Below are positions 18,497-40,334 of a stretch of DNA of 64,000 bases, piece after piece (position 1 is the first letter of the stretch; the number at the start of each line of letters is the position of its first letter). A program made the position numbers and the translations under genes. The notes beneath the pieces were generated by a model. That model saw only the letters and a list, made by a program, of their open reading frames with translations. It searched no databases and was not told the DNA's origin. The DNA lies in the IMG/VR virus record IMGVR_UViG_3300017917_002466, positions 189,665 through 253,664 of that record. One strand, written 5' to 3'.

Positions 18497-20146
18497 TTAG
18501 GCTTTAAACTTAAGCATATAATTTGGAAAGTTTTCTAACATTTGATGGTTGCGGCAATATATTATATCAAAGAAGTCGTCCCAAAGCGGTTGTGTCTTTT
18601 TCCAGCTAAAGTTTTCTTCTACAAACCATCTATTTCTAATACCAACATCCCTTCTAAGAATTGGATTTTTGAAAAGAATATTAAGCTTTTCATTAGCTTG
18701 TTTAACCACTTCTTTCTCTGGGTTAGCATCAACTATCCATTCTTTATCAAGTAACATACTCAAACATCCAACATTTGTAGCAACAACTGGTAATCCCATT
18801 GCCATTGCTTCTAAAACTACTCTTGGAATGCATTCTGTTATACTCAATAAAATAAGAACGTCAATAGATTGATAAAAATTCTTCATATGATCTTGGGTTT
18901 GCTGTACCCAAAACTTTTGGCCCCAATCACTTTTCTGTATTACTGGAAAATTAAGCTTATCAAATAAATAAGTTCTTTTAAGTGGGATTGGACTTCCTGC
19001 ATATCCTACGTTGAATCTATTTGAATTAAAAGAAGAATTTGATTTAAAGTAATCAGTATCAACTGATTCAGGAAGAAAGATTGTTGGACAGTCATATTTT
19101 TCTTTTGCATAATTATATGTCTCTGGGGAGATTGTAGCAATAACATCTGCATACTGATAGGTTGCACTCACAAGTCCACCATAACCTCCAATAACTGGAA
19201 TACCTTTATCTTTACATTTTTGAATTAATTCATCATTAATGCTTCTTGGAGCCATATCAGGGCCGTGGAAATATATTACATCAACATCATCAAGACTCAT
19301 ATTAAATTCAGTATACTTTTGTAATATAATATTATGCCTTGTAAATTTTTGTTGCTCTTTTCCAAGATAATAATAAGCCCATCCCCATTGGTCAATAACT
19401 TTAACAACATTAAGCTTCTTATCATCATTCATAAAAGTCTCCATCCTTATCAATTCTTTCTTCTTACCAAGAGTATAATCCTTTTCTTTATGTTCTATTT
19501 CTTCTTTAATTATACTTGTATAGGCTCCCAATAAAGCATAAAGGTTATTTTTGGTAGGATTCTTTTTCAGAATATTCCAAAGCTTAAGAGGAACTCTTTC
19601 TAACCAATTATACTTAAACTCTTTGTATTTCTCCATCAAATTATAGTATCTTTCAAAAATAGTTTCATCAGTCCAATTTGGACTATGATCGCCAACAATT
19701 TTTTGCTTAGTAATAAAAGTATATCCATCTCTTTTCATTCTATCAGTCTGTTCAACTTCACAGGATAAACAAGATAGATTATATGGATACTTCTTAAATA
19801 TATCGTGCTTGTAAATTTTAACTCCACAGATAGGAAAATTCAAATGAACATCTTTAAGCATAAAAGCTACCATTGAAATCTCTTTTCTTGACTTAATAAT
19901 CGCATTATACATATCTTCAATGGCATTTGGATAAAGAATCATATCATCATCAACTTGCACATAGTAAGGAGTCTGACATTGATTAATCATTTGCTGGAAT
20001 GCTTTTGACATTGGATGATAGTTGCTAATAGCAAAAAGTTTAAATCCAACTGACTGATTCTTTAAAGCCTCGATACAGTCTTCGTAGTTTATACTTTTAT
20101 CCGTCGTAATAACAAACACTGTCAAATCATTAATAAACTTTTTCAT
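18497..20146 (-). CDS. fused GT-A (GT2-like) + GT4 glycosyltransferase
   Basis: YVQVDDDM DxD motif; C-terminal E.IP.VVLEAMAMGLPVVATNVG GT4 signature. Confidence 0.88.
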   Translation of the reverse strand: MKKFINDLTVFVITTDKSINYEDCIEALKNQSVGFKLFAISNYHPMSKAFQQMINQCQTPYYVQVDDDMILYPNAIEDMYNAIIKSRKEISMVAFMLKDVHLNFPICGVKIYKHDIFKKYPYNLSCLSCEVEQTDRMKRDGYTFITKQKIVGDHSPNWTDETIFERYYNLMEKYKEFKYNWLERVPLKLWNILKKNPTKNNLYALLGAYTSIIKEEIEHKEKDYTLGKKKELIRMETFMNDDKKLNVVKVIDQWGWAYYYLGKEQQKFTRHNIILQKYTEFNMSLDDVDVIYFHGPDMAPRSINDELIQKCKDKGIPVIGGYGGLVSATYQYADVIATISPETYNYAKEKYDCPTIFLPESVDTDYFKSNSSFNSNRFNVGYAGSPIPLKRTYLFDKLNFPVIQKSDWGQKFWVQQTQDHMKNFYQSIDVLILLSITECIPRVVLEAMAMGLPVVATNVGCLSMLLDKEWIVDANPEKEVVKQANEKLNILFKNPILRRDVGIRNRWFVEENFSWKKTQPLWDDFFDIIYCRNHQMLENFPNYMLKFKA

Positions 20147-20148
20147 AC

Positions 20149-21000
20149 TTACTTTTTCCATTTTCTAAACTTATTATGAATTATCATTGCAATATCATTA
20201 TAGTCCGTACATTTAAGAATTGAGGATTCCCAATAATCTTCAATTGGGTTTCTAAGTATAGAAAGCAATTCTTGCTTATTTGAGAAGACTGGAATGTTTA
20301 ATCTATCAATCATACATTTTGGAAGAAAATTAGGCGGAGTACAAATCCTCGTTCCCCTACACGCCATATCAATTACTCCATAAGCATAACTTTCTTTATG
20401 AGTAATGATATAGGTTTCAATAAATTCGGTATTCTTCAAATAAGTTTCATAGTCTGAATAAAAGATAGGATTCTCAAAAAGCTTAATATTATTTTCTTCC
20501 CCTTTGAAACGAATCATTCTATAGAACTTATATCCTTCATCCAACAATTCTTCTACAGCGATTTCAATTTGATATGTCCAATCATCAAAAGTATTAAGAT
20601 ATTTTTCCCAGTAATGATCTATAAGGATAGTCTTCTTATCTTTTTCTGTTGGGAATAAAACTTTCTTATCAGCTGGTAATGGAATAACAGTATAATTTTC
20701 AGAAGATTCATCGCCATTAAAAAGAAAAGAATGGTCTAGAAAAGGAAATATGCACTCCATCAAAGAACAAACTTTAAGACATTGAGTCTTATGTTTAATA
20801 ATTTGGCTTTTAATATCAACTTCATCACTGAAATAACTAACTATCAAAACAAAATCAACTTTAGGTAAATCTTGAAAATTAGTAAAAGGCGAATTAAAAA
20901 CTTTAACATTCAGATTTTCAAAAGCCTTTCTAATGTTCCTTGTAATCATTTGAACACTATCATTAGCTCCTTCATCACCCATTATCAAAAGTTTGTACAT
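20149..21000 (-). CDS. putative GT-B glycosyltransferase-like protein
   Basis: THKESYAYGVIDMACRG resembles the GT4 ES.G....E...G motif; cluster context. Confidence 0.55.
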   Translation of the reverse strand: MYKLLIMGDEGANDSVQMITRNIRKAFENLNVKVFNSPFTNFQDLPKVDFVLIVSYFSDEVDIKSQIIKHKTQCLKVCSLMECIFPFLDHSFLFNGDESSENYTVIPLPADKKVLFPTEKDKKTILIDHYWEKYLNTFDDWTYQIEIAVEELLDEGYKFYRMIRFKGEENNIKLFENPIFYSDYETYLKNTEFIETYIITHKESYAYGVIDMACRGTRICTPPNFLPKCMIDRLNIPVFSNKQELLSILRNPIEDYWESSILKCTDYNDIAMIIHNKFRKWKK

Positions 21001-21002
21001 AC

Positions 21003-21440: not shown

Positions 21441-21443
21441 TTA

Positions 21444-22010
21444 TTAACTCCTGTATGCTAAAGCAATTCCCACTAAATGTCCATCACCTTCTATATATCT
21501 TGTCGGAAAATTCAAAATGTTCCAACCGTCTTCTTTGAATTTCTTAAAATAGAATGATTCAGCTAAACTAGAATCGTGGAACATAATCAGATTGGAAAAG
21601 TTTTTACAGTTATTATAATCAGCAATAATAGCTTCATCTGAATGATCTCCGTCAATAAATATCAAATCCACCTTTCCTATCTTTTCAAAGAGCTTTGGAA
21701 TCTCTACTTTAGAATCTCCTTGTATCATATTAATGTACCAATCAAATCCAGCCTTTTGAAAATTGGATTGTGCTACTACTTTCATATCAGCCTGAATCCA
21801 ACTATCTACTGAATAGATTTTTGGAATCTTCTTATTATCAAGAATGGCTTGACAAAAGGTAATTGAGGAGCCTCCCTTATGAGTTCCTATCTCTACAACC
21901 TTTTCAACTTGGAAAGTCCTTGCAATAGTGTACATCACATCATAACACTGATTGGAACTTCCAAGGTTTCTATCCCTATTGATTTCATCTAATACTGCAT
22001 TGATTTTCAT
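21444..22010 (-). CDS. class I SAM methyltransferase (Methyltransf_24-like)
   Basis: VVEIGTHKGGS, GDS, DLIFIDGDHS, FHD. Confidence 0.88.
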   Translation of the reverse strand: MKINAVLDEINRDRNLGSSNQCYDVMYTIARTFQVEKVVEIGTHKGGSSITFCQAILDNKKIPKIYSVDSWIQADMKVVAQSNFQKAGFDWYINMIQGDSKVEIPKLFEKIGKVDLIFIDGDHSDEAIIADYNNCKNFSNLIMFHDSSLAESFYFKKFKEDGWNILNFPTRYIEGDGHLVGIALAYRS

Positions 22011-22693: not shown

Positions 22694-22699
22694 AACAAA

Positions 22700-23542: not shown

Positions 23543-24484
23543 TTAAGCTCCTAATATTTCAATCAATATTTTAGCTCTATTAATATAAGTATGATTCTCT
23601 TTAACATATAACATCATTCTTTTCATATTTTCTTTTGATAGGGAAGCATAAGATTGTTCAGTAGTATAAAAAAGAGTATATGGGTTATTATCATAGGCTA
23701 TATATCCTTTAAGAATATTACCAATATGTGGTGAATTAGTTCCTGTAAACTTACCATAGCTAATATTTTTCCATATCCTACAAGGTATATAACCGCATTG
23801 TTGGTGCCAATTTCCACGAATATCTACTGAAATATAAGAGTTCTGAATTAGCTTTTTATTTTCTTCAAAGCTAATATTTCCTTGTCCAACTTTTATATTT
23901 TTCCCATTCTGTTGACAACATTGAGCAAACATTTGAAACTTAGGTAAAATATTATCGTGATTAGTACTTCCTATATAATAAACTGTTGGAATATTGGGAT
24001 TGAATCTTATAGGATTTTCAACGTCTATTTCATGTGGAAGTAAATCGGTTGCCCAAGGTTGATAAATCGCATTATTCTTTTTATCCCAAAAACAAAAATC
24101 CCTTATTTTTTCAACTGTTGGCGTATTAGCAGTTTTAACTAAAAGATTATTAGGATCATTATAATTCATACTAATTCCACGTTCACAAGGCTCAACATAA
24201 TTACAAAGATTGATTTGTTTACAACCAATGGCAACATATTTGTCTGGATTACAATGATGAGTTATATATTTTATATTCTTAAAAAGAGGAACTTGTTGGT
24301 CTACTTGACCTTCTGTAAAAATAACAGTATCATTAAAATCAAAGTCTTTTACTTTTTCAACATCGCTATTATCAAACCAATAAGGTGTATATCCAAGATA
24401 TTCAAATGCACGAAAGTATCCATAATAAACATAGCTATTAGTATGCGTATGTAACTTATGACCCCATATCATAAACTTTTTCAT
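23543..24484 (-). CDS. putative glycosyltransferase-like protein
   Basis: IWGHKLHTHT.SY, PWATDLLP, GYIPCRIWKNISYG, HTYINR (GT-B/CgeB-like C-terminus). Confidence 0.6.
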   Translation of the reverse strand: MKKFMIWGHKLHTHTNSYVYYGYFRAFEYLGYTPYWFDNSDVEKVKDFDFNDTVIFTEGQVDQQVPLFKNIKYITHHCNPDKYVAIGCKQINLCNYVEPCERGISMNYNDPNNLLVKTANTPTVEKIRDFCFWDKKNNAIYQPWATDLLPHEIDVENPIRFNPNIPTVYYIGSTNHDNILPKFQMFAQCCQQNGKNIKVGQGNISFEENKKLIQNSYISVDIRGNWHQQCGYIPCRIWKNISYGKFTGTNSPHIGNILKGYIAYDNNPYTLFYTTEQSYASLSKENMKRMMLYVKENHTYINRAKILIEILGA

Positions 24485-25443
24485 ATTAACTCTCCAACTC
24501 TGTTTTTAATTTTATTATACAAACAATCTTTAATATCTATGTCACCAAAATACTTAATAAACTCGCTATTTGAAAAAACGTAATGACCACAAACTTTAAT
24601 TAGCTTTAATTTATTTTCAAACGGATTAAAGGTATTGTCGCCTTTAAGCCACTTAACCCACATATTAGAATTATAACATATTTCAAAAAATTTATCAAAG
24701 CTTTTTTCATCCATTTTATCTAAATAACATTCAGTTTCCATTCTACCAATTTCTGGAGCAATATTAATAGCATCTAATCCTTTTTGAAATTTAGACTGAA
24801 TTAACGAACTATCTAAGTAATCTCCGTTATGTTCTTTACTCAAAATATTATAAAGTTTACAAATTTCAATCATTTCTCTAAGTTTATTTTCTTCATACTT
24901 ACCAGTATTCATATCAAGTTTTAAATTTGTTCCAGATTGTATAACAGCATATTTAATTTGATTAAAGCATTTAACATTCTTTTTCATAAAAGTAAGCATA
25001 TACATTAATTGATCTGGTTTAAAACTTCTTATAGATTCTTCAGTTCCAATTTCAAACATTATTTTTGAATTTTTTTTATTACAAAAATTTATGAAATTCG
25101 CTGTTATTTCAAAACATTTCATAAAATCTTCATCAAGCTTCCAAGGGTCAATATGAATCAAATCCATATATTCACAATCAGTAATTAAAGAAGCAATACC
25201 AAAGTCTTCTTGAATTCCTTGTTTTGGTCCTCCATGATCTCTGCATATAACAATATCTTTATTTCTTTCTTTAACATATTGTACAAATTCTTCAGTAGTC
25301 CAATTATTAACATAACCACCATTAAAATCTATTTGTCTTCTTGAGGGAATCAAACCAATATTCAAACCAAAATTATTTAAGTTAATAATTACATCAACTA
25401 TATTCTTACTCATTGGACCTAAAAACAACTTGGGAAAATTCAT
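24481..25443 (-). CDS. GatZ/KbaZ-like (tagatose aldolase/epimerase-like) TIM-barrel protein
   Basis: LGPMS, SRRQID..GGYVN, CRDHGGP, IHIDP, EIGTEE, KEHNGDY, INIAPE.G. Confidence 0.7.
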   Translation of the reverse strand: MNFPKLFLGPMSKNIVDVIINLNNFGLNIGLIPSRRQIDFNGGYVNNWTTEEFVQYVKERNKDIVICRDHGGPKQGIQEDFGIASLITDCEYMDLIHIDPWKLDEDFMKCFEITANFINFCNKKNSKIMFEIGTEESIRSFKPDQLMYMLTFMKKNVKCFNQIKYAVIQSGTNLKLDMNTGKYEENKLREMIEICKLYNILSKEHNGDYLDSSLIQSKFQKGLDAINIAPEIGRMETECYLDKMDEKSFDKFFEICYNSNMWVKWLKGDNTFNPFENKLKLIKVCGHYVFSNSEFIKYFGDIDIKDCLYNKIKNRVGELI

Positions 25444-25460: not shown

Positions 25461-25820
25461 CTAAATATTAACGTCTTTAATTCCATGATTTCTAGGAACG
25501 GTAATAGAAACTGATGTATTTTCTCCATCAAGTTTACAATCATTAATAACAACTCTGATTCCTCCCCCAATTCCCATAATAAGTTGGTCATATATTATAC
25601 CCGATTCGGCTAATTGTTTTTCAGTTGCTTTTCTAGTTGACTCTCTCCTACCAGTTGTCAAAATAATGTTATAACCTTTAATATCCCACTCTAATAATTT
25701 TTCTTTTGTGCCTTCTAACAATTCTAATTTGAAACTTTCTGAAGTAGTCTCAGTAGGTGGATTATGTCTAACTAATGTACCATCTATATCACAAAAAATT
25801 GTTTTAGGTCTGGAATCCAT
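25461..25820 (-). CDS. minimal HAD-family phosphatase
   Basis: IFCDIDGTL, LTTGR, YDQLIMG, IND. Confidence 0.85.
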   Translation of the reverse strand: MDSRPKTIFCDIDGTLVRHNPPTETTSESFKLELLEGTKEKLLEWDIKGYNIILTTGRRESTRKATEKQLAESGIIYDQLIMGIGGGIRVVINDCKLDGENTSVSITVPRNHGIKDVNI

Positions 25821-30412: not shown

Positions 30413-31084
30413 TTATTGTCTTCCCAAAAATATTTTTTGAAAATATTCTAATTGATTATTTACAACTTGAGGGACTTTAGCTAAATAATCACCTTCAACT
30501 GAATACTTATGAAGGTCGACTTCTTCTTGTGATAAGCAAATTCCAACTATTCTTTCTTTCATTTGTGATTCAAATTTATCATTAGGAAGTAAAGCTTTAT
30601 GTAAACCCTTTTCAAAAAACTTTTTCATAATATCTTGCTTATAAATTCCAGCAGCAGCAAATACTCCAATATGTCCAGTATTTGGAATAGAATTGTATTT
30701 GGTCATTGATAATACTTTAGTTGCATAATTTAATTCTCTTGATAAAAAAGGCCCCTCATTAAAATACATAAGGTTCCAAGTTTTATCATCATATAAGAAT
30801 TTATCAAATGATTTCTTTAAAAGCATACTATCTTGCATCAAGAAATAAAAATGTTCATTGGGATATTCTTCATATGCTTTCCATAATGATCCTGCTCCAC
30901 GATGAGGATTTATATAATCTGAAACTATTACGTTTGGATACTTTTTTACTTTTTCTATATAGGTTTTATCATCCGAATTTGAATCATATATTATCGTTCG
31001 TTCGTTTGGATGAAATTGAAATATAGCATCTAAACATATAAAAATTGGACTTCTTTCTGTATATTTGGATGGTATAATAAACAT
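30413..31084 (-). CDS. GT-A-like hypothetical protein
   Basis: IYDSNSDD, FLMQDS, ER..GI. Confidence 0.55.
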   Translation of the reverse strand: MFIIPSKYTERSPIFICLDAIFQFHPNERTIIYDSNSDDKTYIEKVKKYPNVIVSDYINPHRGAGSLWKAYEEYPNEHFYFLMQDSMLLKKSFDKFLYDDKTWNLMYFNEGPFLSRELNYATKVLSMTKYNSIPNTGHIGVFAAAGIYKQDIMKKFFEKGLHKALLPNDKFESQMKERIVGICLSQEEVDLHKYSVEGDYLAKVPQVVNNQLEYFQKIFLGRQ

Positions 31085-32595: not shown

Positions 32596-34011
32596 TTAGT
32601 CCAATTTAATAGCTGACCAACTAGTATCTTTAAATACTAAGATTTTACTTATACCTTTTTCTCTAAAAAATTCGTTAACAGCTTTTTTAACTCCTTCTTG
32701 ATTATAATCGTGACCAGCTAAAATTCCACCCTTTTTAACTTTACTATACCAAGATTCTAAATCAGCTTTAACATATTCATATGAATGGTTGCCATCAATA
32801 TATATCATATCAATAGAATCATTCTTAACTTGTTCACAATATTTTTCTCCATATTCTTTAATCAATTCAACATGAGGATATTTTAAAAGTCTTTCTCTTG
32901 CTTTTTGTTCAATAATTGGCCAATAATTTCTTGGATTTTCACCACCTTCATAAGATAAATCCATCCCCCATAAATCAATTGAAAAAACTTTTTTACAAAA
33001 AATAGCAAAAAGTTCAGTTGAAATTCCTAAATAACATCCAATTTCTATTACTGTTTTTCCTTCCAACTTATAATGATTAATCAAATCTAATAATCCACCA
33101 GTAGTATTTTCTGGTGATCTGACATTAGAATTTGGCCCCATCCTAGGTTCTTTAATAATAGCTTCAATTCTTCTAGATGGTTTATTTTCATCATTACATA
33201 AAAGATGTTCGTACTTTATTAGATTACTTAAAATATACTTTGAACAATTTCTTTCGTCTAAAATTATTTTAGAAGGATTCCAACCAGGTCTTGAAATAAC
33301 ATCTTCCAAATTAGATATTTTTCTATCCATTGAATTTTTATAAAAGTCATTATTATATTCTACGTGTCCAAAAGATTTTAATTTAAGTTTAGCTTTTTCT
33401 GCACCACCTAACCAAGTATAATGCCAACCTGTTACTTTTCCATATTTTTCTTTGTTCACATAAAGAATTTCATCTGTATGATTTTTCCAATAATTCCCAC
33501 TATAACTTCTAAAAGAATCAAAAGAATATTGTTTAAAATAACTATAATTACAAAGTCTTGTTCCACGCCAAGGTTGATTTACTATCGCATCTATGAAATA
33601 AGAATAAAGATCAACATTAAAAACAAATAATTTATTAGCTTGAAAATCATTCTTTAATAATTCTCTAAGTACTTCTGGATTTGGAATTTCATCCAAATCT
33701 GACATAAGAATAATATCATCATCTTTACAATTAACAAGAGATTGGGCTATACTATTTTTATGGTTTACATCTCTATCCCAATGATTCCATTTATTACCCA
33801 TGTCATCTATAAACTTATTATGAATAATTTTATCTTCAAACTTTTTAAACCTATCTTTATTTTCTAAATAATAAAATGGTTTATCGTTTCCTTGAAAAGT
33901 TTTGTTACATTCCCCAATAACAAAATAATCAACATAAGGATCAAGCATTTCCATCCTAATTTCAAGTAAATCTAATTCATTTAGAAAAGGGAAGACATCA
34001 TAAACTTTCAT
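32596..34011 (-). CDS. GT17-like GlcNAc transferase fused to Methyltransf_24
   Basis: YD.F.F.NELDLLEIR...VDYFVI.E, SDLDEIP, GWHY.W.GG; EIG.YLG.S, YIDGNHSY, GG..AGHDY. Confidence 0.88.
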   Translation of the reverse strand: MKVYDVFPFLNELDLLEIRMEMLDPYVDYFVIGECNKTFQGNDKPFYYLENKDRFKKFEDKIIHNKFIDDMGNKWNHWDRDVNHKNSIAQSLVNCKDDDIILMSDLDEIPNPEVLRELLKNDFQANKLFVFNVDLYSYFIDAIVNQPWRGTRLCNYSYFKQYSFDSFRSYSGNYWKNHTDEILYVNKEKYGKVTGWHYTWLGGAEKAKLKLKSFGHVEYNNDFYKNSMDRKISNLEDVISRPGWNPSKIILDERNCSKYILSNLIKYEHLLCNDENKPSRRIEAIIKEPRMGPNSNVRSPENTTGGLLDLINHYKLEGKTVIEIGCYLGISTELFAIFCKKVFSIDLWGMDLSYEGGENPRNYWPIIEQKARERLLKYPHVELIKEYGEKYCEQVKNDSIDMIYIDGNHSYEYVKADLESWYSKVKKGGILAGHDYNQEGVKKAVNEFFREKGISKILVFKDTSWSAIKLD

Positions 34012-34136
34012 TTTTTAACTCCTCTTATTAAAATTAAATCCACCGAAAACAAATTACTTTTATAATACCATTTATTCATTAATTTATTATATTCAATTTA
34101 TTGTTCATCGCAAAATATTTTTATATTCTTAAATTT

Positions 34137-35012
34137 TTATTTGTAGCACTCAAAATTATACAAATAAGCATATTTACTTTCTTTAACTTCTTTTATAACT
34201 TCATCATAAGATTCTAATTTTTCTTTCCTACTTAAATACATCCAACCCTTTGTAAAAATATTACTATTAGCCCAATAACCATCCGAAACATTATATCTTG
34301 CCCAATACTTAGGAGCAATAGTTAATTTTGACCTTTCATTTAACCAAGCTGGAAAATAAGCAAAAGATGAATTAGAAAGAATTAAATAATTAGCCTGATA
34401 AATCATAAAAAAATCAGTATTAATTCCAGTATGATAACATTTCAAAGGAAATTCAGGAAACAAAGTTCTTGCATATGAAACATCATCAGTAATCACAGTA
34501 AACTTCACATCTGGATTTATTTTTCTTATTTGAGTAATTGCATTATCCCAATATGATTTAGGGAGAAGTACTTCTCTAATTCCTTTATACTCTCCTCCAC
34601 GAACATTAATAATACACTCATTATCATCAGTTCTCATATTTTTATATGAATCTATATTTTTAATTTGAATCCATTGTCTAACTTTCTCTTTATCCAAATA
34701 TTGTTCAGTCTGCCAACATCCTATTAATTTTGAATTATCTTGAAGATCATCAAAATTATGATATAAATGTATATTCACCTCATCAACATGATGAATTTGA
34801 ACTACTTTCTCTTTATATTCTCGTTCTATTTCAACAACATCTTTACCATAATCCAAATCAAGAAAATCTATCTGTGATTGTCCACCGTAATAATCTCCAT
34901 AAATTTTTTTAGTAAATCCCCATTCAAATCCTTTTCTTTCGGCTATTGAACGTAAAACAACATACTGCCAAATATGATTACCAAAATTACCTGTAAAATC
35001 AGTTGTTATCAT
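34137..35012 (-). CDS. GT11-like glycosyltransferase
   Basis: GNFGNH.WQY, NVRGGEY, VITDD, SNSSFAYFPAW, IAPKYW. Confidence 0.8.
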   Translation of the reverse strand: MITTDFTGNFGNHIWQYVVLRSIAERKGFEWGFTKKIYGDYYGGQSQIDFLDLDYGKDVVEIEREYKEKVVQIHHVDEVNIHLYHNFDDLQDNSKLIGCWQTEQYLDKEKVRQWIQIKNIDSYKNMRTDDNECIINVRGGEYKGIREVLLPKSYWDNAITQIRKINPDVKFTVITDDVSYARTLFPEFPLKCYHTGINTDFFMIYQANYLILSNSSFAYFPAWLNERSKLTIAPKYWARYNVSDGYWANSNIFTKGWMYLSRKEKLESYDEVIKEVKESKYAYLYNFECYK

Positions 35013-35656
35013 ACTTTTCCCAATACAAAAACGTGATTTCCTTTTCCGTAGGCAAAATCTTGCCAGTTATCTTTTAATCCTTGAACATGATTACAATGTT
35101 TAATAACTTTCCATTTATTCAATTCAAAATTCTTTATCCACCAATCTTCATTTTCTGCAATTAAATGTGAAATTTCTAAATGATATTCATCAATCCTATA
35201 TTTTCCATTATCTCCCATTGGAATAACACACATAATTTTCGAACATACTTTAGAAATATTATCTAACATATCTATAAGCTGTTCTTTTGTTAAATGTTCC
35301 AAAACATCTTTCATAATAACATGAGTATAACCAGTATTAGAATGTTTATCCCAAGAACTTTTATCTGAACAATTCCAACAACCTTCTGGGGCAAATGATA
35401 AAGCATAATCACTTATATCGCATCCATCTGCTTTAATTTCTAATTGTCTAAAAGCTTTTACAATAAATCCTTTAGCACATCCAACATCAAGAACATAACT
35501 ATTAGAATCTAAACCAAAATAATCAATAAAAGATAAAGCTTCTTTACAACTACGAATTGGCATCCATCTATAGTTAGTTAACCAACCTTTTCCTGATTGT
35601 CTTCCTCTTTCGTAATAATCAGCGTCATAAAAATCTCCTGTATATTTTTCAAACAA
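35009..35656 (-). CDS. class I SAM methyltransferase
   Basis: VLDVGCAKG, GCDIS.YA, DVLEH. Confidence 0.88.
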   Translation of the reverse strand: MFEKYTGDFYDADYYERGRQSGKGWLTNYRWMPIRSCKEALSFIDYFGLDSNSYVLDVGCAKGFIVKAFRQLEIKADGCDISDYALSFAPEGCWNCSDKSSWDKHSNTGYTHVIMKDVLEHLTKEQLIDMLDNISKVCSKIMCVIPMGDNGKYRIDEYHLEISHLIAENEDWWIKNFELNKWKVIKHCNHVQGLKDNWQDFAYGKGNHVFVLGKV

Positions 35657-36581
35657 AATCTATATCCTCCATTTTTTGTAATAAATTATGTATGTATTCA
35701 TTTTCATCTTTACCACAATTACAGAAAGTGCATCTATATCCCAAATCATACACAGGATTATTTTCTAACCAGTTTTCTAAATCTTTAATTTTACAAAGTG
35801 CAAAATCTTCTGGTAATTTTCCTGGTGATTCAAAAGAAAGTTCCATAGATGGGCATGGTAGAAAATTACCTTTCCAATCAATTGCTGCTCTCAACCAAAC
35901 CATATAACATCCCGAAGGTGTTCCAAATTCTTTACGAAAGAATATTAAAGGATTTCCATATTTACTTACTTCATTTACAACTTCATCTTCCCAAGATTTT
36001 TCACAAGGTCTATTTGGTGCAACTCTAACTATAGTATTATTTTCTTTTGCAAAATTATATATGTTTTTAATTTCTTCAAGACTTTTCTGGTTATATACTA
36101 TAAATGACATACTTCTTTTAACATTTGATGGAATATGATTTAAGTTTATTTTCTTTGCATAGCTTGCAGATTGTACGCTGACTCTTATCCAACTAAAATT
36201 ACTAAATAATTCTGGCTTATATTTCTCTAAATCTAAACCATTAGTAACTAATGACAATTTTAAATTCTTACTATGTGCATATTCAATAGCAGATTCAAAA
36301 TGTGTCCATAAAAGCGGATCACCACCACCACTAAATTCAAGAGCTTTTAATCCTTTCTTTGTAAGAACATCAACTACTAGTTTAAAATCTTCAATTGATA
36401 ATTCAGACGAATCTTTATTTTCATTTTTAAAACAACAATACTTACATTTTAATTGACATCTTATATTTGGAAAAACTGAAATATGAATCGGTGAAACAAT
36501 TTCTCTTTTCTCTAACTTTGCAAGATGTTCTTGGTGATGAATTAATTTATGTACTCCAGGTGAAAAACTTTTTAAGCTCAT
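35649..36581 (-). CDS. radical SAM protein with C-terminal SPASM/twitch-like cysteines
   Basis: CQLKCKYC, FSGGGDP, LVTNG, WIRVS, C...PC...C..C. Confidence 0.88.
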   Translation of the reverse strand: MSLKSFSPGVHKLIHHQEHLAKLEKREIVSPIHISVFPNIRCQLKCKYCCFKNENKDSSELSIEDFKLVVDVLTKKGLKALEFSGGGDPLLWTHFESAIEYAHSKNLKLSLVTNGLDLEKYKPELFSNFSWIRVSVQSASYAKKINLNHIPSNVKRSMSFIVYNQKSLEEIKNIYNFAKENNTIVRVAPNRPCEKSWEDEVVNEVSKYGNPLIFFRKEFGTPSGCYMVWLRAAIDWKGNFLPCPSMELSFESPGKLPEDFALCKIKDLENWLENNPVYDLGYRCTFCNCGKDENEYIHNLLQKMEDIDFV

Positions 36582-37237
36582 TTTAATTCCTCCACAGCTT
36601 GAAGTTCACCTTTTAGAATCATCCATAAAGCCCTTTCTATAATATGACCTTCTGTTGGATTTTTAGCAACAAGATGATCTTTTAAATTCTGCCAAAAAGA
36701 AATAGAATAAAATAAAGCCTGTCTTTTTTCAATTAAGTATTGTGAACCTGGACAAAATCTTATCCAATCGACATGATTGTAGTTAGCAAAAATTGTATTC
36801 ATAAACTCATCAAACGAACTATATTTACATCCTTGACTATAAGTTTTATTACATTCTGGTATATACCAGGAATTATTTATTTCCATATATCCACCATCTT
36901 CAGCTTTTTTATGGCATCCTTCTGCTTTAACATGACTATAATCTTCTAATGAAGTAAATTCATTATTTAAAATAAGTTTATCGAAAGTTTCTTTTTTACA
37001 ATGGTCAAAAGGAAAAGCTTGAACAAATGCCATTAAATTTGGTAAGTTATCATAATTACTTATTATAAAATCAAAAATATCTCTTTGATTTCCACCAAGA
37101 TTTTCTACATTCAAAATATGATTATTATTTTCTATTACTTCTCCTTTATTGTAAACAACATAATTATCAGTATATTCTTCAACCCAAGAATAATCTTCTT
37201 TAAATCTACTTATAATTATTTTAGCTTTAATTTCCAT
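36578..37237 (-). CDS. DUF3431-like protein
   Basis: ISRF.ED..W, VYNKG, N.G......I..NYD.LP...F.Q..PFDH, GH..ER.W. Confidence 0.7.
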   Translation of the reverse strand: MEIKAKIIISRFKEDYSWVEEYTDNYVVYNKGEVIENNNHILNVENLGGNQRDIFDFIISNYDNLPNLMAFVQAFPFDHCKKETFDKLILNNEFTSLEDYSHVKAEGCHKKAEDGGYMEINNSWYIPECNKTYSQGCKYSSFDEFMNTIFANYNHVDWIRFCPGSQYLIEKRQALFYSISFWQNLKDHLVAKNPTEGHIIERALWMILKGELQAVEELK

Positions 37238-37239
37238 TT

Positions 37240-37437
37240 TTATTTTCTCCAATAACTATATATATTTTATCAATTTCATACTTCACAAATTTTTGTTCTC
37301 GTCTTGGTTGTTTCGTGGCTCAATTAAACATTTCATAAACTACTTTCTCAATATCAGTTTTATCTTTCAAATATCAAGTAAGTATCTTGAAAAGTTATTT
37401 TTATTAAATCAGCAACACCAGTAATAAATATATTCAT
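37240..37437 (-). pseudogene. internally deleted NAD-dependent sugar epimerase/dehydratase relic
   Basis: MNIFITGVADLI/NFSRYLLD Rossmann start joined to DKTDIEKVVYEMFN*ATKQPRR...YEIDK/IYSYWRK C-terminus, with frameshifts and a stop. Confidence 0.7.
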
Positions 37438-38096
37438 TGAACAACTTCTCTAAAATGTGAACCATATTCATTCCATCCATGAAAACCAAAAGGTGTAATG
37501 CCTTGAATCTCTGGTACATTTTTTTCATGTGAAAAATACTTAGCAACTTCTATTGGGGCATATTTAATACCAGCTTTAAGAAAAGCTTCTCTATTATACA
37601 CACAAACATTTCCATCTTCATTATAAAAACCTCTTTCGTGAGTAAATCCAATATTGTATTTTTTAGGAGCTTCAAGAAGCTTTTTACTTCTTAAAGTAAA
37701 ACCTCCATTTCCAACTCTAACATGCTCTCCTTGTGGAGAAATATATGAATCTTCTGAATAAGGCCATATAGCGCCAATATAATCATACTGTAAAAATTCT
37801 TCTCTCCATAAATGAGGATTCGTAATAAACCCATCATATTGAACCAATATACAAAAATCAGTATCAATATAGTCTACTAAATCTTCAAATACAAAACGAT
37901 TATACTTAATATAAGTATCCATTGGATAACATTCACAAAATTGAATATTAGATGGTAAATTTTTAGGCCAAATATGACTTACAAATTTAACAGTACCAAA
38001 GTTAATTCCTTGCATACTATACAACATTGCTTTAATAGTATCTTCAATATGAGAACCTGTTGGAGCTACTAAAGTAATATTAGATAAATTCAACAT
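37434..38096 (-). CDS. DUF5672-like GT-A protein
   Basis: LxLxNITLV, TD..L.VQ.DGF..NP..W...FL.YDYIGA.W, VGNGGF.LRSKKL, NED, FS.E, PFGFHG. Confidence 0.78.
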   Translation of the reverse strand: MLNLSNITLVAPTGSHIEDTIKAMLYSMQGINFGTVKFVSHIWPKNLPSNIQFCECYPMDTYIKYNRFVFEDLVDYIDTDFCILVQYDGFITNPHLWREEFLQYDYIGAIWPYSEDSYISPQGEHVRVGNGGFTLRSKKLLEAPKKYNIGFTHERGFYNEDGNVCVYNREAFLKAGIKYAPIEVAKYFSHEKNVPEIQGITPFGFHGWNEYGSHFREVVQ

Positions 38097-38101
38097 AATT
38101 A

Positions 38102-38803
38102 TTAACTCCTATTTTTATATTTTAACAATATATATTGTGTTTCTCTATTGACTAATTCTTTATTTATTATTGAATTTGTAACACTTCCACTCCAAGTTCT
38201 ATTGACTATTGTTATTTCATTGAGAATTAACGGCAACCCATACTTTTCTTTAATTCTTTTATAAAATTCACAATCCATAAACCATATCAAATTTTCATCA
38301 AAAAATATTGAACCTTCATTTATAAAACTTAAACAACTATGAGTTCCTATAGTATTATGAAAATGAATATTATCATTCCATTCTGGAATGTGTTCTCTAT
38401 AATAATTGATTCCATCGTTAGAATGTATATACTTTGAAACCAACCATTTTGCATTAGGATTTTTATTTAGGATTTCATAAGTATTTAACAAAGATTCTGT
38501 ATTAAAAAGAAAATCGTCTTGACAAAGAACTTTAATAAACTTACCTTGACTTTTTCTTATACAATTATTAACATTTGCCGATGAATTCCCTCTTTTTTCT
38601 TCAAACTTAAAATACTTAATATCTAAACATTTGCTCCAAGATGCACACAATCCTTTTATTGATTCATCAACTGAATGATCTGAAACAATAACTTCAAAAT
38701 CTTTAAAAGTTTGTTTTTCTAATATAGCAAGCGATTGGTTTAAAAAATTCAAACCAAATCCGTGCATCTCATAACAAGGTATTACAACACTTATTAATAT
38801 CAT
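38102..38803 (-). CDS. GT2 glycosyltransferase
   Basis: SVVIPCYE, QTFKDFEVIVSD, QDD, FDE...W.MD. Confidence 0.88.
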   Translation of the reverse strand: MILISVVIPCYEMHGFGLNFLNQSLAILEKQTFKDFEVIVSDHSVDESIKGLCASWSKCLDIKYFKFEEKRGNSSANVNNCIRKSQGKFIKVLCQDDFLFNTESLLNTYEILNKNPNAKWLVSKYIHSNDGINYYREHIPEWNDNIHFHNTIGTHSCLSFINEGSIFFDENLIWFMDCEFYKRIKEKYGLPLILNEITIVNRTWSGSVTNSIINKELVNRETQYILLKYKNRS

Positions 38804-39531
38804 AATTTCTCATATGGTTTTTTGTTTTTAATTTCATTAGCAGAATTCAACTGTTGCATTACATTTTTTCTAAAGTCATTGATTGGATTATTGTCGTTAT
38901 AAACATACAACGTCTTTTCTATAAATCGGATTCTTTCAGCCCCACTCATTTCAAGCAAAGGATACATTATAGCCATATCCCACGCCATTGCATAATATCT
39001 TCCAAACGCATCTCTCAAATCCTTATCTTCTATCTTTTTCCATAGCCAATATTTGAATGTTCTTAAGTGTGAAGTTACCCAGGAGTCTTTTCTATAATTT
39101 TGAATACTTGGAATTGGTTTACAAAAGCCATTATGCATACCAGATTCGCTTACAAAAGAGCCATAAGTCATCCAATTTTTCTCTTTAGTATAAACTTCAT
39201 CTAAATAGCTTAAAACGTATTGGTCATAAAGCCAATCATCACCATCTAATAAAACTATTACTTCTTCATCATCTTTACAAATACTTTGAATTCCATAAAC
39301 TATATTTTCCATTGCTCCAATATTTAAACTTCTTTTCATTACCTTAAAAAATTCTTTTAAGTTATGACTTTTAATAGTTTCCTTAATAGATTCAATCGTT
39401 TTATCCGTTGAGTTATCATCTATTATAATTGCTTTCCAATTCTTATATTCTTGGTTTATTAGTGATTCAATACACTTAGAAATCCATTTCTCTGAATTAT
39501 AAACTGGTATTATTATTCTAAAGCTTATCAT
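38800..39531 (-). CDS. GT2 glycosyltransferase
   Basis: IIIPVYN, IIDDNSTD, LDGDDWL, SHLRTF, D.A.M.P..EM. Confidence 0.9.
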   Translation of the reverse strand: MISFRIIIPVYNSEKWISKCIESLINQEYKNWKAIIIDDNSTDKTIESIKETIKSHNLKEFFKVMKRSLNIGAMENIVYGIQSICKDDEEVIVLLDGDDWLYDQYVLSYLDEVYTKEKNWMTYGSFVSESGMHNGFCKPIPSIQNYRKDSWVTSHLRTFKYWLWKKIEDKDLRDAFGRYYAMAWDMAIMYPLLEMSGAERIRFIEKTLYVYNDNNPINDFRKNVMQQLNSANEIKNKKPYEKL

Positions 39532-40334
39532 ATTCTAAGTTCCTTTATCCATTTTTCAACAATTTTTTGCTTATCAAATTCATACTCAATATTCAAATAG
39601 TTTTTTCCTTCAATAACATGAAGCTTTTTATCTGCCATTCTAGCCTCACCAGGAACATAAGGAGCACATTCTCTAATAGAAGAAAAGTAAAGATCAGTAA
39701 AGGAATCATACATCTTTTGCTTGTTTTCTTCGTATCCTTTATAAACTACTTTATTTCCATCCACTAATTTTGAAACTTCGGTCTGCCAATACCAAGGGTC
39801 TGTTATTGCTCCATATATATAAATCTTTTCACAACCATCTTCTAATGCTCTCTTGATAGAAAGATGGACTTGTTTATTCTTATCTACAGAACCAACTATT
39901 CCTCCAATTTTTCCTTGAAGATTAGAATTGGGCTTTAAATCTTCAAGAATATTGGGAAGTATGAAGTATGGATGATCTAGTCCATGATAATTCCTCTGGT
40001 GTTCGCTAACATAATGAATCTTGTCAAATATCTCATACTTTATATTTACGAGTGGAAATATGTCTTGTTCGTGGCAGGAAAGGAAAAAACCTTTGATTGG
40101 TGGTCTTTCAATGAAGTTACTTCTAAAATGGACTACTAAAGTATCTTCTTTATTAACTTTAAGTCTACTATTTGGAGTATACTGTTCTGCTTTGCACTTA
40201 TTCAAATGCCATGAGTGGGGCCCCATGAATACTGTTTCATAGCCGGACTCGTTCAAAGCATTAGTCAAATTTATGAAAGAAACAGTTGATCCACCTTGAG
40301 CACTCCACCCACTGAGTATAATTATTTTTCCCAT
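39528..40334 (-). CDS. GT4-like (GT-B) glycosyltransferase
   Basis: GGS, HE, YVSEHQ, IVGSVDKNK, SIREC..YV..EA. Confidence 0.65.
   Translation of the reverse strand: MGKIIILSGWSAQGGSTVSFINLTNALNESGYETVFMGPHSWHLNKCKAEQYTPNSRLKVNKEDTLVVHFRSNFIERPPIKGFFLSCHEQDIFPLVNIKYEIFDKIHYVSEHQRNYHGLDHPYFILPNILEDLKPNSNLQGKIGGIVGSVDKNKQVHLSIKRALEDGCEKIYIYGAITDPWYWQTEVSKLVDGNKVVYKGYEENKQKMYDSFTDLYFSSIRECAPYVPGEARMADKKLHVIEGKNYLNIEYEFDKQKIVEKWIKELRI

What the first reader, a model, noticed from the sequence alone, without database searches (positions are those of the whole stretch)
18497..40334. 22-kb, 23-gene glycan biosynthesis island in a phage, without export/polymerase genes
Seen: a tightly tiled operon with GT2 x3, GT2+GT4, GT4-like x2, GT11 x2, GT17+methyltransferase, DUF5672/DUF3431-like proteins, SAM methyltransferases, an O-acetyltransferase, three radical SAM enzymes and nucleotide-sugar enzymes. 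No multi-TM flippase, Wzy, ABC transporter or undecaprenyl-priming transferase is visible. Known: O-antigen/capsule loci need those membrane components. Inference: a cytoplasmic acceptor (virion proteins, or less likely DNA) receives a complex methylated and acetylated oligosaccharide, reminiscent of giant-virus capsid glycosylation.
Basis: partly seen in the sequence, partly recalled or inferred. Interest (0 to 1): 0.75.

Follow-up and report, generated by a model that had tools for sequence, protein, structure and literature searches.

The report
Membrane-free glycan factory in a jumbo phage
A 253-kb T4-like phage from a pond carries a 22-kb block of 24 soluble sugar-building genes with no membrane export parts, a kind of cluster already known from large aquatic phages whose target (the virus particle or the host's surface lipids) has never been tested.

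Summary
It holds about 14 glycosyltransferase (GT) domains, five SAM methyltransferase domains, a hexapeptide acyltransferase, three radical SAM enzymes (two B12-dependent paralogs) and a sugar-activation set.

The record is a complete 253,664-bp distant T4-like jumbo myovirus from a pond metagenome. It is not a chimera.

No priming transferase, Wzx, Wzy or ABC-2 permease exists anywhere in the genome, and no ORF has four or more hydrophobic segments.

The island is a mosaic of two cassettes:
- Module A (GT2, DUF5672, DUF3431, GT11, GT17) recurs in at least 477 viral contigs, including Synechococcus cyanomyoviruses and a 642-kb phage.
- Module B (cupin, kinase/nucleotidyltransferase, aldolase-like, HAD, B12 radical SAMs, C-methyltransferase) recurs in large aquatic phage contigs.

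Module A also occurs in bacteria, mostly Lachnospiraceae. There 70 of 80 loci carry multi-TM partners, against 0 of 80 viral loci.

The class is the known phage 'LPS cluster'. Virion-protein glycosylation is my preferred reading (about 0.4). Host glycolipid remodelling through host MsbA or Und-P machinery is nearly as likely. DNA glycosylation is disfavoured.

The parts
39528..40334 (-). Compact GT-B (GT4-like) glycosyltransferase. First gene of the island. Its family is almost only viral.
   Evidence: No Pfam hit. ESM Atlas feature score 0.99 to viral clusters; related clusters carry Glycos_transf_1 and GT4-conflict. No homolog in isolated phages.
38800..39531 (-). GT2 glycosyltransferase (GT2-c)
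   Evidence: Pfam Glycos_transf_2, 78 bits. Homologs in L007 and L023.
38102..38803 (-). GT2 glycosyltransferase (GT2-b), Module A
   Evidence: Pfam, 44 bits. Present in 75 of 80 viral and 58 of 80 cellular DUF5672 loci.
37434..38096 (-). DUF5672 protein, the marker gene of Module A. Annotated as GT-A type in Synechococcus phage RN05-S.
   Evidence: Pfam, 64.7 bits. At least 477 viral contigs and 350 cellular genomes hold a relative. RN05-S annotation.
36578..37252 (-). DUF3431 protein, probably a divergent GT-A fold, Module A
   Evidence: Pfam, 33.7 bits. AF2 model pLDDT 94 with only weak GT-A matches (E >= 5e-3, TM 0.3-0.39). Colinear in the 642-kb phage (L007).
35649..36581 (-). Radical SAM enzyme without a B12 domain. 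Possibly modifies a nucleotide-sugar.
   Evidence: Pfam Radical_SAM, 59 bits. Weak PDB matches include BlsE and DesII, both nucleotide-sugar radical SAM enzymes. All NCBIfam hits are far below their cut-offs.
35009..35656 (-). Class I SAM methyltransferase
   Evidence: Pfam Methyltransf_12/25
34137..35012 (-). GT11 (alpha-1,2-fucosyltransferase family), Module A
   Evidence: Pfam, 38.5 bits. Present in 76 of 80 viral DUF5672 loci.
32596..34011 (-). GT17 domain fused to a Methyltransf_24/TylF-type O-methyltransferase, Module A
   Evidence: Pfam, 95.5 and 59.5 bits. GT17 homologs in Synechococcus phages and in the 642-kb phage LR756502. Present in 70 of 80 viral loci.
31085..32593 (-). B12-binding radical SAM enzyme (class B, methyltransferase-type), paralog 2
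   Evidence: Pfam and NCBIfam. 54% identical to 28905-30410.
30413..31084 (-). GT-A fold glycosyltransferase with no Pfam family
   Evidence: 239 homolog clusters. AF2 pLDDT 97. Foldseek probability 1.0 to RmlT, XylT1, TarS/TarP and B3GalT5.
28905..30410 (-). B12-binding radical SAM enzyme, paralog 1
   Evidence: Pfam and NCBIfam. 557 metagenomic proteins with E <= 1e-20; the 120 listed are 49-71% identical.
28554..28904 (-). Cupin of the mannose-6-phosphate-isomerase C-terminal type (sugar isomerase or epimerase), Module B
   Evidence: Pfam and NCBIfam. Syntenic in L017-L029.
26987..28567 (-). Bifunctional enzyme: N-terminal sugar/alcohol-phosphate nucleotidyltransferase and C-terminal APH/choline-kinase-fold kinase. 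Module B.
   Evidence: Profile against PDB: LicC 1.8e-10, HddC 1.3e-7, PntC 5.6e-7. Invariant HGD..N and D-W-R kinase motifs. Weak Pfam APH and NTP_transferase hits.
25834..27012 (-). NDP-sugar C-methyltransferase-like enzyme, Module B
   Evidence: Pfam Methyltransf_14 C-terminal domain. PDB 4rv9, TDP-sugar 3-C-methyltransferase, E 4.9e-5 over residues 60-378.
25461..25820 (-). Small HAD phosphatase, Module B
   Evidence: Pfam and NCBIfam HAD-IIIA/IIB. Syntenic in L017-L029.
24481..25443 (-). Class-II aldolase / GatZ-KbaZ-like TIM barrel (aldolase or ketose-phosphate epimerase), Module B
   Evidence: Profile against PDB: 3txv 4.9e-6, 2fiq 1.1e-5. Pfam GatZ_KbaZ-like in 4 of 7 homologs.
23543..24484 (-). 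Compact GT-B glycosyltransferase from a virus-dominated family
   Evidence: ESM Atlas structure TM 0.85-0.87 to viral GT clusters and 0.66-0.68 to bacterial GT1/GT4. 41% identical homolog in Synechococcus phage S-SCSM1.
22781..23542 (-). GT11 glycosyltransferase
   Evidence: Pfam, 97.6 bits
22010..22726 (-). GT2 glycosyltransferase. The true start is probably the ATG at 22693.
   Evidence: Pfam, 93 bits. The N-terminal hydrophobic stretch comes from the upstream GTG start.
21444..22010 (-). O-methyltransferase (Methyltransf_24, CmcI-like)
   Evidence: Pfam, 64.8 bits
21003..21440 (-). Hexapeptide-repeat acyl/acetyltransferase
   Evidence: Pfam Hexapep, 39 bits
20149..21000 (-). Compact GT-B (GT4-like) glycosyltransferase
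   Evidence: ESM Atlas structure TM 0.74-0.79 to GT4 clusters
18497..20161 (-). Two-domain glycosyltransferase: N-terminal GT2 and C-terminal GT4. Last gene of the island.
   Evidence: Pfam. The hydrophobic stretch at residues 432-471 lies inside the GT4 Rossmann core and is not a TM pair.

Best explanation
The island is a self-contained, entirely soluble assembly line for a complex, non-polymerised oligosaccharide.

Shown:
- About 14 GT domains of at least six kinds, five methyltransferase domains, one acyltransferase and three radical SAM enzymes.
- One dedicated precursor route, Module B: aldolase/epimerase-like TIM barrel, cupin isomerase, HAD phosphatase, kinase fused to a nucleotidyltransferase, an NDP-sugar C-methyltransferase and two B12 radical SAM paralogs.
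- No phage-encoded lipid-carrier priming, flipping, polymerising or ligating protein.

Inferred chemistry:
- Module B turns a central sugar phosphate into a free rare sugar.
- It re-phosphorylates that sugar at C1 and activates it as an NDP-sugar, in the manner of AmgK/MurU or LicA/LicC.
- It then C-methylates the sugar.
- Module A (GT2, DUF5672, DUF3431, GT11, GT17) builds a conserved core.
- The other GTs, O-methyltransferases and the acetyltransferase extend and cap it.

Inferred acceptor, the weakest step: phage structural proteins made in the same cytoplasm (capsid, decoration or the PKD/fibre proteins encoded about 7 kb further along the window). Progeny virions would then carry a methylated, acetylated glycan coat, as in chloroviruses, mimiviruses and mycobacteriophages. 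The virus-only GT-B families (23543, 39528) are the best candidates for the initiating, protein-directed transferase.
For: Enzyme inventory.

No membrane machinery in the complete genome.

Module A comparison:
- It is a phage-wide cassette, found in at least 477 IMG/VR contigs. Among the best 80 loci, 75 have GT2-b, 76 have GT11 and 70 have GT17.
- It never travels with a multi-TM protein in viruses: 0 of 1402 ORFs.
- In bacteria 70 of 80 loci have such proteins. They include an ABC exporter, a Bac_transf priming enzyme, a 7-TM protein and DUF6056.
- None of those bacterial partners has any tblastn match in the viral loci or the genome.
- The cassette is shared by phages of different kinds: a Synechococcus cyanomyovirus, a 642-kb huge phage and this pond phage. 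Its closest cellular copies are in Gram-positive Lachnospiraceae. So it is not tied to one host envelope.

Virus-specific parts: GT-B families 23543 and 39528 are 89-100% viral in the ESM Atlas and are absent from the cellular loci.

Position: the island lies on the same strand as, and next to, the PKD/fibre/baseplate module.

From established knowledge, not tested here: every experimentally characterised soluble multi-GT cluster of a lytic virus glycosylates virion proteins or DNA. Known phage O-antigen converters (Gtr, Oac, Wzy-beta) are integral membrane proteins.
Against: - There is no direct evidence for any acceptor.
- No known protein-initiating GT family (NGT/GT41, GtfA/B, Maf, BAHT, EarP) was recognised.
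- The MCP has no Ser/Thr-rich tail like those glycosylated in mycobacteriophages.
- No structural gene is a conserved neighbour of Module A in the 80 viral loci. The top neighbours are GTs, SDR dehydratases, a DegT aminotransferase and methyltransferases.
- The cellular homologs clearly work on lipid-linked intermediates, so the simplest expectation is that the phage copies do too.
- Expression timing is unknown. No T4-type late promoter TATAAATA lies inside the island, and a near-consensus sigma-70-like promoter lies upstream of it.
- Published interpretations of the homologous clusters favour host surface modification.
Confidence: 0.4

Rival explanations
1. Host envelope remodelling through host machinery. 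The phage GTs extend a host lipid-linked acceptor on the cytoplasmic face of the membrane. The acceptor is either lipid A-core (lipooligosaccharide-type, flipped by the host's MsbA) or a host-primed Und-PP-sugar exported by the host's Wzx or ABC transporter and ligase. This changes the infected cell's surface so as to block superinfection or progeny re-adsorption. It is the published hypothesis for cyanophage and pelagiphage 'LPS clusters'.
For: - The island is homologous and partly syntenic with the cyanomyovirus clusters for which this was proposed (PMC1079782, PMC7824862, PMC7029224).
- Cellular homologs of Module A sit in lipid-linked pathways with Bac_transf and an ABC exporter.
- LOS-type loci in bacteria contain only soluble GTs and sugar-nucleotide genes (established knowledge). 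Absence of membrane genes is therefore expected under this model.
- GT11, and the GT25 found in relatives, are classic LOS/O-antigen families.
- A sigma-70-like promoter upstream would fit early expression.
Against: - None of at least 80 viral loci ever carries a primer transferase, flippase or ligase, although these phages do carry whole nucleotide-sugar pathways.
- The cassette moves between phages of unrelated hosts, while lipid-linked acceptors and exporter specificities differ between hosts.
- All experimentally known phage surface converters are membrane proteins of temperate phages (established knowledge).
- In a lytic, non-growing cell, newly exported glycolipid would dilute old receptors only slowly (inference).
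- The host is unknown, so even the presence of LPS is unverified.
Confidence: 0.35
2. Another cytoplasmic product: a free or nucleotide-linked oligosaccharide or small glycoconjugate, or glycosylation of host proteins (for example pili, flagellin or S-layer precursors) to disable receptors or defences.
For: - All enzymes are soluble.
- The B12 radical SAM and C-methyltransferase chemistry is typical of aminoglycoside-type secondary metabolism.
- Jumbo cyanophages have been predicted to encode sugar-derived secondary-metabolite clusters (PMC7824862).
Against: - About 14 GT domains imply a long oligosaccharide rather than a small metabolite.
- There is no scaffold-forming enzyme (cyclitol synthase, NRPS/PKS) and no exporter in the genome.
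Confidence: 0.15
3. DNA hypermodification: the GTs glycosylate modified bases in phage DNA to evade restriction.
For: - Phage GT-B enzymes resemble T4 beta-glucosyltransferase in fold. A T4-Gluco-transf cluster appears at rank 76 for 23543.
- The S-SCSM1 homolog is annotated 'DNA beta-glucosyltransferase'.
Against: - The genome has no thymidylate-synthase homolog, which is needed for hmC, hmU and 5hoC (PMC13326640).
- There is no Tet/JBP match (although the controls did not match either).
- Known DNA glycans use one to a few GTs, not about 14 plus O- and C-methylation and acetylation.
- Module A also occurs in bacterial cell-surface loci.
Confidence: 0.04
4. Artefact: the island is host DNA joined to phage DNA by mis-assembly.
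For: Island GC3 is somewhat lower than the rest of the genome (0.20 against 0.26). GT clusters are typical of bacterial genomes.
Against: - Phage genes flank both sides on the same contig.
- Logan's separate assembly of the run gives a single 47,164-bp contig with 0 differences. By its offsets it covers window positions of about 16,776-63,939.
- Codon usage (r 0.96) and tetranucleotide usage (r 0.978) fall inside the range of other 22-kb blocks of the genome.
- The same gene order occurs in other viral contigs.
Confidence: 0.01

Closest known systems
'LPS biosynthesis' gene clusters of T4-like cyanomyoviruses (P-SSM2, S-SCSM1, S-SCSM2R, S-B05/RN05-S)
   Same: - Large T4-like myovirus.
- Tiled cluster of many GT families (GT2, GT11, GT17, GT4-like), methyltransferases, a cupin isomerase and a nucleotidyltransferase.
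- Direct homologs of GT17, GT11, DUF5672, GT2-b and GT-B 23543 at 30-45% identity.
- No multi-TM protein in the RN05-S island either.
   Different: - This phage is not a cyanophage. It has no psbA, its portal is only about 30% identical to any isolate, and it comes from a pond.
- It lacks the SDR dehydratase/epimerase and DegT aminotransferase genes that accompany the cassette in most phages.
- It carries Module B with B12 radical SAMs instead.
- GT17 is fused to a methyltransferase.
Hypervariable-region glycosyltransferase and radical SAM cassettes of pelagimyophages (PMC7029224)
   Same: - GT clusters plus radical SAM cassettes lie beside the tail-fibre module of aquatic T4-like phages.
- Genomes are low in GC.
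- Function is untested.
   Different: - The family reported as dominant there is GT8.
- The genomes are 140-190 kb.
- No sequence-level link was tested here.
Cell-surface polysaccharide loci of Lachnospiraceae carrying the DUF5672-GT17-GT11-GT2 cassette
   Same: The same four or five genes, at 41-51% identity for DUF5672, co-occur in 58-70 of 80 loci.
   Different: The bacterial loci include a Bac_transf priming enzyme, an ABC_membrane+ABC_tran exporter, a 7-TM 510-aa protein and DUF6056. The phage versions never do.
Virion glycosylation machineries of chloroviruses and mimiviruses, and of mycobacteriophages (Freeman et al. 2023, cited in PMC12619734)
   Same: - Virus-encoded soluble GTs, with multi-domain GT-methyltransferase proteins and virus-encoded sugar activation.
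- They act in the cytoplasm without membrane carriers.
- Their glycans are methylated.
   Different: - No homology was shown beyond shared folds.
- The mycobacteriophage systems have 2-4 genes.
- The acceptor here is unproven.
- The resemblance to chlorovirus A064R is in architecture only and is recalled from memory.
AmgK/MurU and LicA/LicC kinase-nucleotidyltransferase pairs; class B radical SAM sugar C-methyltransferases (GenK type); TylC3-type NDP-sugar C-methyltransferases
   Same: - 26987 combines an APH-fold kinase with a LicC/HddC-like nucleotidyltransferase.
- 28905 and 31085 have the B12-binding plus radical SAM architecture.
- 25834 aligns with 4rv9.
   Different: - All scores are far below the family-specific cut-offs.
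- The substrates are unknown.
- The aldolase-like, cupin and HAD context does not match any characterised pathway that I could identify.

Membership tests
Phage 'LPS/glycan' clusters of T4-like jumbo myoviruses | Encoded in a T4-like myovirus genome | tested here: met
   Portal, sheath, MCP, terminase, UvsX and split PolB. Complete 253.7-kb record.
Phage 'LPS/glycan' clusters of T4-like jumbo myoviruses | Multi-gene cluster with several GT families plus cupin isomerase, sugar kinase and nucleotidyltransferase (as described in PMC7824862) | tested here: met
Phage 'LPS/glycan' clusters of T4-like jumbo myoviruses | Homology or synteny with cyanophage cluster genes | tested here: met
   GT17, GT11, DUF5672, GT2-b and GT-B 23543 homologs in Synechococcus phages
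Phage 'LPS/glycan' clusters of T4-like jumbo myoviruses | Lies in the hypervariable region next to tail-fibre genes | tested here: inconclusive
   The island ends about 7 kb from a block of large unannotated ORFs that leads into the PKD/fibre/baseplate genes on the same strand. No close relatives were found to test variability.
Wzx/Wzy- or ABC-transporter-dependent O-antigen/capsule locus | Polyprenyl-phosphate priming transferase (Bac_transf or Glycos_transf_4) | tested here: not met
   No match in the whole genome; the controls matched. No tblastn match to a bacterial Bac_transf.
Wzx/Wzy- or ABC-transporter-dependent O-antigen/capsule locus | Flippase (Wzx) or ABC-2 permease/exporter | tested here: not met
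   No ORF with four or more hydrophobic segments.
Wzx/Wzy- or ABC-transporter-dependent O-antigen/capsule locus | Polymerase or ligase (Wzy_C family) | tested here: not met
Temperate-phage serotype-conversion modules (GtrABC, Oac) | Integral membrane GtrA/GtrB/GtrC or a 10-TM acyltransferase | tested here: not met
   No multi-TM protein in the genome. The acyltransferase at 21003 is a soluble hexapeptide-repeat type.
Phage DNA glycosylation systems (hmC, hmU, 5hoC) | Phage thymidylate-synthase homolog that makes the hydroxylated or hydroxymethylated pyrimidine | tested here: not met
   PF00303 is absent; the controls matched in 10 genomes. The requirement is taken from PMC13326640.
Phage DNA glycosylation systems (hmC, hmU, 5hoC) | Alternative entry through a TET/JBP dioxygenase | tested here: inconclusive
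   No PF12851 match, but no control genome matched either
Viral virion-glycosylation systems (chlorovirus, mimivirus, mycobacteriophage) | Virus-encoded soluble GTs and sugar activation, independent of membrane carriers | tested here: met
Viral virion-glycosylation systems (chlorovirus, mimivirus, mycobacteriophage) | Glycan covalently attached to capsid, tail or fibre proteins | not testable with these tools
   This needs virions. The phage is uncultured and known only from a pond metagenome.
Lipooligosaccharide-type core extension | Only soluble or peripheral GTs, no polymerase and no dedicated flippase | tested here: met
Lipooligosaccharide-type core extension | Host has lipid A-core and the first GT recognises it | not testable with these tools
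   The host is unknown, and no GT could be assigned to a core acceptor.

The most novel reading that the evidence does not exclude
Module A (GT2, DUF5672, DUF3431, GT11, GT17), which hundreds of large phages carry without any membrane partner, is a phage-autonomous protein glycosylation system. Many aquatic and gut jumbo phages would then coat their virions with a conserved core glycan, extended here by a C-methylated rare sugar made by B12 radical SAM enzymes. That would make virion glycosylation a common trait of large bacteriophages, parallel to giant eukaryotic viruses. It would also overturn the 20-year-old 'LPS gene' label.
Probability: 0.35. Interest if true: 0.8.

Novelty: new member of a known kind. 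Interest (0 to 1): 0.55.

Why it matters
Large glycan clusters take up as much as about 9% of some jumbo phage genomes. They have been called 'LPS genes' since 2005 without any experiment.

This instance, and the comparison it prompted, turn the question into a clean test. The same cassette is membrane-coupled in bacteria and never so in phages. So either phages plug into host export, or they glycosylate something in the cytoplasm.

Cultured cyanophages that carry the cassette could settle this with virion glycoproteomics and LPS profiling.

Module B also points to an uncharacterised route to a C-methylated NDP-sugar that uses cobalamin-dependent radical SAM enzymes.

Tried and rejected
- Single-protein scans of IMG/VR with GT17-MT and with the portal found no close relatives. 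Alignments were needed.
- Megablast of the flank against isolated phages found nothing.
- Expression timing was sought through the T4 late promoter TATAAATA. There are 84 genome-wide against about 77 expected, and none in the island's gaps. The sigma-70 scan gave 144 sites against 120 expected. Both are uninformative in this AT-rich DNA.
- The methyltransferase domain of 32596 matches 31 mycobacteriophages, but at genome ends and not beside their GTs. It gives no link to the proven virion-glycosylation operons.
- A literature search for DUF5672 and DUF3431 found no functional study.
- Freeman et al. 2023 is not held in the library.
- A profile search of PDB sequences with the 30413 family found nothing. 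The fold search solved it.
- DUF3431 stays only weakly GT-A-like.
- A search for Ser/Thr-rich tails on the MCP and other proteins found none of note.
- A phosphonate reading of Module B (LicC/PntC-like transferase, P-methyltransferase-like radical SAM hits) was considered and dropped. The radical SAM scores are equally weak for all class B families, and no PEP-mutase-sized candidate is in the island.
That row was left out and the job was sent again.

Full report
**What the sequence is.**
- The window is the last 64 kb of a single 253,664-bp virus record. IMG/VR classes it as having direct terminal repeats, and CheckV rates it 100% complete.
- The genome has 33% GC and about 411 ORFs.
- It encodes a T4-type portal (about 30% identical to T4-like portals), tail sheath, major capsid protein (29% to gp23), a split large terminase, a split family-B DNA polymerase, UvsX, DnaB, SbcC and RNR.
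- It also has an array of 35 tRNAs, plus one further tRNA gene elsewhere.
- It has no psbA. No isolated phage is close to it.
- The only public run that holds it is a pond metagenome.
- It is therefore an uncultured, distant T4-like jumbo myovirus.

**The observation.**
- Between 18497 and 40334 there are 24 minus-strand ORFs, tiled with overlaps or very short spacers. Only three gaps exceed 50 nt.
- The five ORFs without Pfam hits were resolved:
  - 20149, 23543 and 39528 are compact GT-B glycosyltransferases whose nearest ESM-Atlas clusters are 89-100% viral for 23543 and 39528.
  - 30413 gives an AlphaFold model of pLDDT 97 that Foldseek places among GT-A glycosyltransferases with probability 1.0.
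  - 24481 is a class-II aldolase/GatZ-KbaZ-like TIM barrel.
- DUF3431 gives a confident model with only weak GT-A resemblance.
- The tally is about 14 GT domains, five methyltransferase domains, one hexapeptide acyltransferase, three radical SAM enzymes and five precursor enzymes.

**Absence of membrane machinery.**
- Bac_transf, Glycos_transf_4, Wzx, Wzy_C and ABC2_membrane have no match anywhere in the genome, while the control genomes matched each time.
- A hydropathy scan finds no ORF with four or more hydrophobic segments in the whole phage.
- The only apparent anchor, on the GT2 at 22010, is an artefact of an upstream GTG start.
- The same scan finds 7-10 segments in PMT, UbiA and LPG-synthase proteins of a cellular locus, so it works.

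**Not a chimera.**
- Phage genes flank both sides: a DNA ligase, a CCA-adding enzyme and a KamA-like enzyme at lower coordinates; AAA, DnaJ, PKD/fibre and baseplate genes at higher coordinates.
- Logan's separate assembly of the run yields one 47,164-bp contig. It is identical over the 6 kb laid. By its offsets it spans window positions of about 16,776-63,939.
- Codon and tetranucleotide usage of the island fall within the spread of other 22-kb blocks of the genome.

**Anatomy: two portable cassettes.** Comparison with related loci splits the island in two.

*Module A* is GT2 (38102), DUF5672, DUF3431, GT11 (34137) and GT17.
- It is colinear in the 642-kb huge phage LR756502 and in two IMG/VR fragments. 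CheckV rates those fragments 8-14% complete, which implies genomes of about 500 kb.
- It is present in rearranged form in Synechococcus phage RN05-S and its kin.

*Module B* is the cupin, the kinase/nucleotidyltransferase, the aldolase-like protein, the HAD, the B12 radical SAMs and the C-methyltransferase.
- It recurs in many metagenomic contigs, some of 150-285 kb. There it is often joined by an SIS isomerase and a split transketolase.
- It also occurs once in a cellular MAG, next to PMT-type membrane GTs.
- The 526-aa protein has a LicC/HddC/PntC-like nucleotidyltransferase domain. Its C-terminal domain keeps the HGD..N and D-W-R kinase motifs.
- 25834 aligns with a TDP-sugar 3-C-methyltransferase.
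- The two B12 radical SAMs are 54% identical paralogs. They belong to a family of 557 metagenomic proteins (E <= 1e-20); the 120 listed are 49-71% identical.
- My inference is that Module B makes an NDP-activated, C-methylated rare sugar from a central sugar phosphate. It does this by isomerisation or aldol chemistry, dephosphorylation, anomeric phosphorylation and nucleotidyl transfer.
- The genome has no SDR dehydratase or epimerase. Any GDP-fucose for the GT11 enzymes must therefore come from the host, or these enzymes use another donor.

**The key comparison.**

| Feature | Best 80 viral loci | Best 80 cellular loci |
|---|---|---|
| Total relatives of DUF5672 found | at least 477 IMG/VR contigs | 350 prokaryote genomes, best 80 mostly Lachnospiraceae |
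| GT2-b | 75 | 58 |
| GT11 | 76 | 69 |
| GT17 | 70 | 70 |
| DUF3431 | 27-41 | 13 |
| SDR dehydratase | 68 | not counted |
| DegT aminotransferase | 56 | not counted |
| ORFs with four or more hydrophobic segments | 0 of 1402 ORFs | 190 ORFs, in 70 loci |

- The viral set covers 1.13 Mb.
- The cellular membrane partners are an ABC_membrane+ABC_tran exporter, a Bac_transf priming transferase, a 7-TM 510-aa protein and the 8-TM DUF6056.
- None of these partners has any tblastn match in about 1.7 Mb of viral loci or in the phage genome.

**What is already known.**
- Clusters of this kind were described in P-SSM2 in 2005 as 24 'LPS genes'. They were proposed to change the host surface during pseudolysogeny (PMC1079782).
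- They were analysed again across jumbo phages as 'capsular polysaccharide modification systems' with cupin isomerases, kinases, nucleotidyltransferases and at least eight GT families (PMC7824862).
- They were also noted, with radical SAM cassettes, in the hypervariable region beside the tail fibres of pelagimyophages (PMC7029224) and in S-SCSM2R (PMC12801897).
- I found no experimental test of the acceptor.
- The feature is therefore a new member of a known kind. It sits in a new phage lineage and has an unusual precursor module.

**Mechanism and rivals.**
- Shown: a soluble assembly line for a long, heavily methylated and acetylated, non-polymerised oligosaccharide, with no phage-encoded way to prime, flip or ligate it.
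- Inferred: the acceptor.
- I prefer virion proteins, at about 0.4, for these reasons:
  - Hundreds of viral copies of the cassette lack membrane partners without exception.
  - The cassette is portable across phages of unrelated hosts.
  - The added GT-B families are virus-only.
  - The island lies next to the fibre module.
  - From established knowledge, every characterised soluble multi-GT cluster of a lytic virus decorates virions or DNA, and known phage O-antigen converters are membrane proteins.
- The main rival, at about 0.35, is extension of host lipid A-core (LOS-type, which needs only MsbA) or of a host-primed Und-PP-sugar.
  - Absence of membrane genes is equally expected under the LOS model.
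  - The bacterial homologs do work on lipid-linked intermediates.
- DNA glycosylation is unlikely, at about 0.04. There is no thymidylate-synthase homolog (PMC13326640), no Tet/JBP match (weak test) and far too many GTs.
- A soluble glycoside or host-protein target keeps about 0.15.

**Limits.**
- The host is unknown.
- Expression timing could not be inferred.
- No acceptor-initiating enzyme was identified.
- Substrate assignments in Module B rest on distant similarity, far below the family cut-offs.

Noticed in passing
window 14364-15548 (-): A KamA-family radical SAM aminomutase (lysine/glutamate 2,3-aminomutase-like, 434 bits to TIGR03820) lies about 3 kb outside the island. A beta-amino-acid-forming enzyme is unusual in a phage. 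It could serve EF-P-type modification or acylation of an amino sugar.
   Followed up: partly
window 16173-17093 (+); paralogs at genome 51419-52318, 59770-60711, 136220-136957, 187643-188407 and 32346-33350: This is the only sizeable plus-strand gene near the island. It is a zinc-finger protein (DUF4379/DUF723-like) with five full-length paralogs at 35-49% identity around the genome. One paralog sits exactly between the two halves of the split DNA polymerase B (58396-59751 and 60684-62081). It looks like a homing-endonuclease-type mobile gene.
   Followed up: partly
window ~63,450-64,000 joined to genome 1-~480 (-): The record's ends meet inside one gene that contains 84-nt (28-aa) tandem repeats rich in Ser, Thr, Ala and Gly (unit about SSSLSATTISAGTSINAGTSIK). 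The 41-nt terminal overlap lies within the repeat, so the true repeat number is uncertain. The protein looks fibre-like and would be a candidate O-glycosylation target.
   Followed up: partly
window 60230-61894 and 61907-63427 (-); genome 1406-3799, 3802-6486: PKD-domain proteins (four PKD repeats in 61907-63427) are followed by a gp6-like baseplate wedge protein. Together with the large unannotated ORFs at 47362-60161, this looks like the adhesin/fibre/baseplate module.
   Followed up: partly
window 40578-40730 and ~40790-40830 (-): A near-consensus sigma-70-like promoter (TTGACA, 17 nt, TATCAT) and a small helix-turn-helix-like ORF, followed by a hairpin with a T-run, lie just upstream of the first island gene. 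This is a possible early transcription unit or regulator for the island.
   Followed up: no
genome 18394-19533 and 20605-21510 (outside the window): The large terminase subunit is encoded as two ORFs separated by another gene (19517-20518).
   Followed up: no
genome 87395-95663 and 108207-108280 (outside the window): There is an array of 35 tRNA genes. A separate tRNA has a CTA anticodon (ARAGORN calls it 'Pyl') and could be an amber suppressor.
   Followed up: no
window 44861-46273 (-): This 470-aa protein has a C-terminal cytidylyltransferase-like/NMN-adenylyltransferase-like domain. It is probably an NAD-salvage gene rather than part of the glycan island.
   Followed up: no
genome 53376-54575 (+), outside the window: A further glycosyltransferase (phrog_7162) sits alone in the replication module, between SbcC and the DNA polymerase. 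It is separate from the island.
   Followed up: no
L115 (BPGB01000006.1) against L044 (IMG/VR UViG 3300029893_000008): A contig binned as a Woesearchaeota MAG gives exactly the same DUF5672 match statistics as a viral contig (51% identity, residues 4-206, E 9e-64). It may be a mis-binned phage contig.
   Followed up: no
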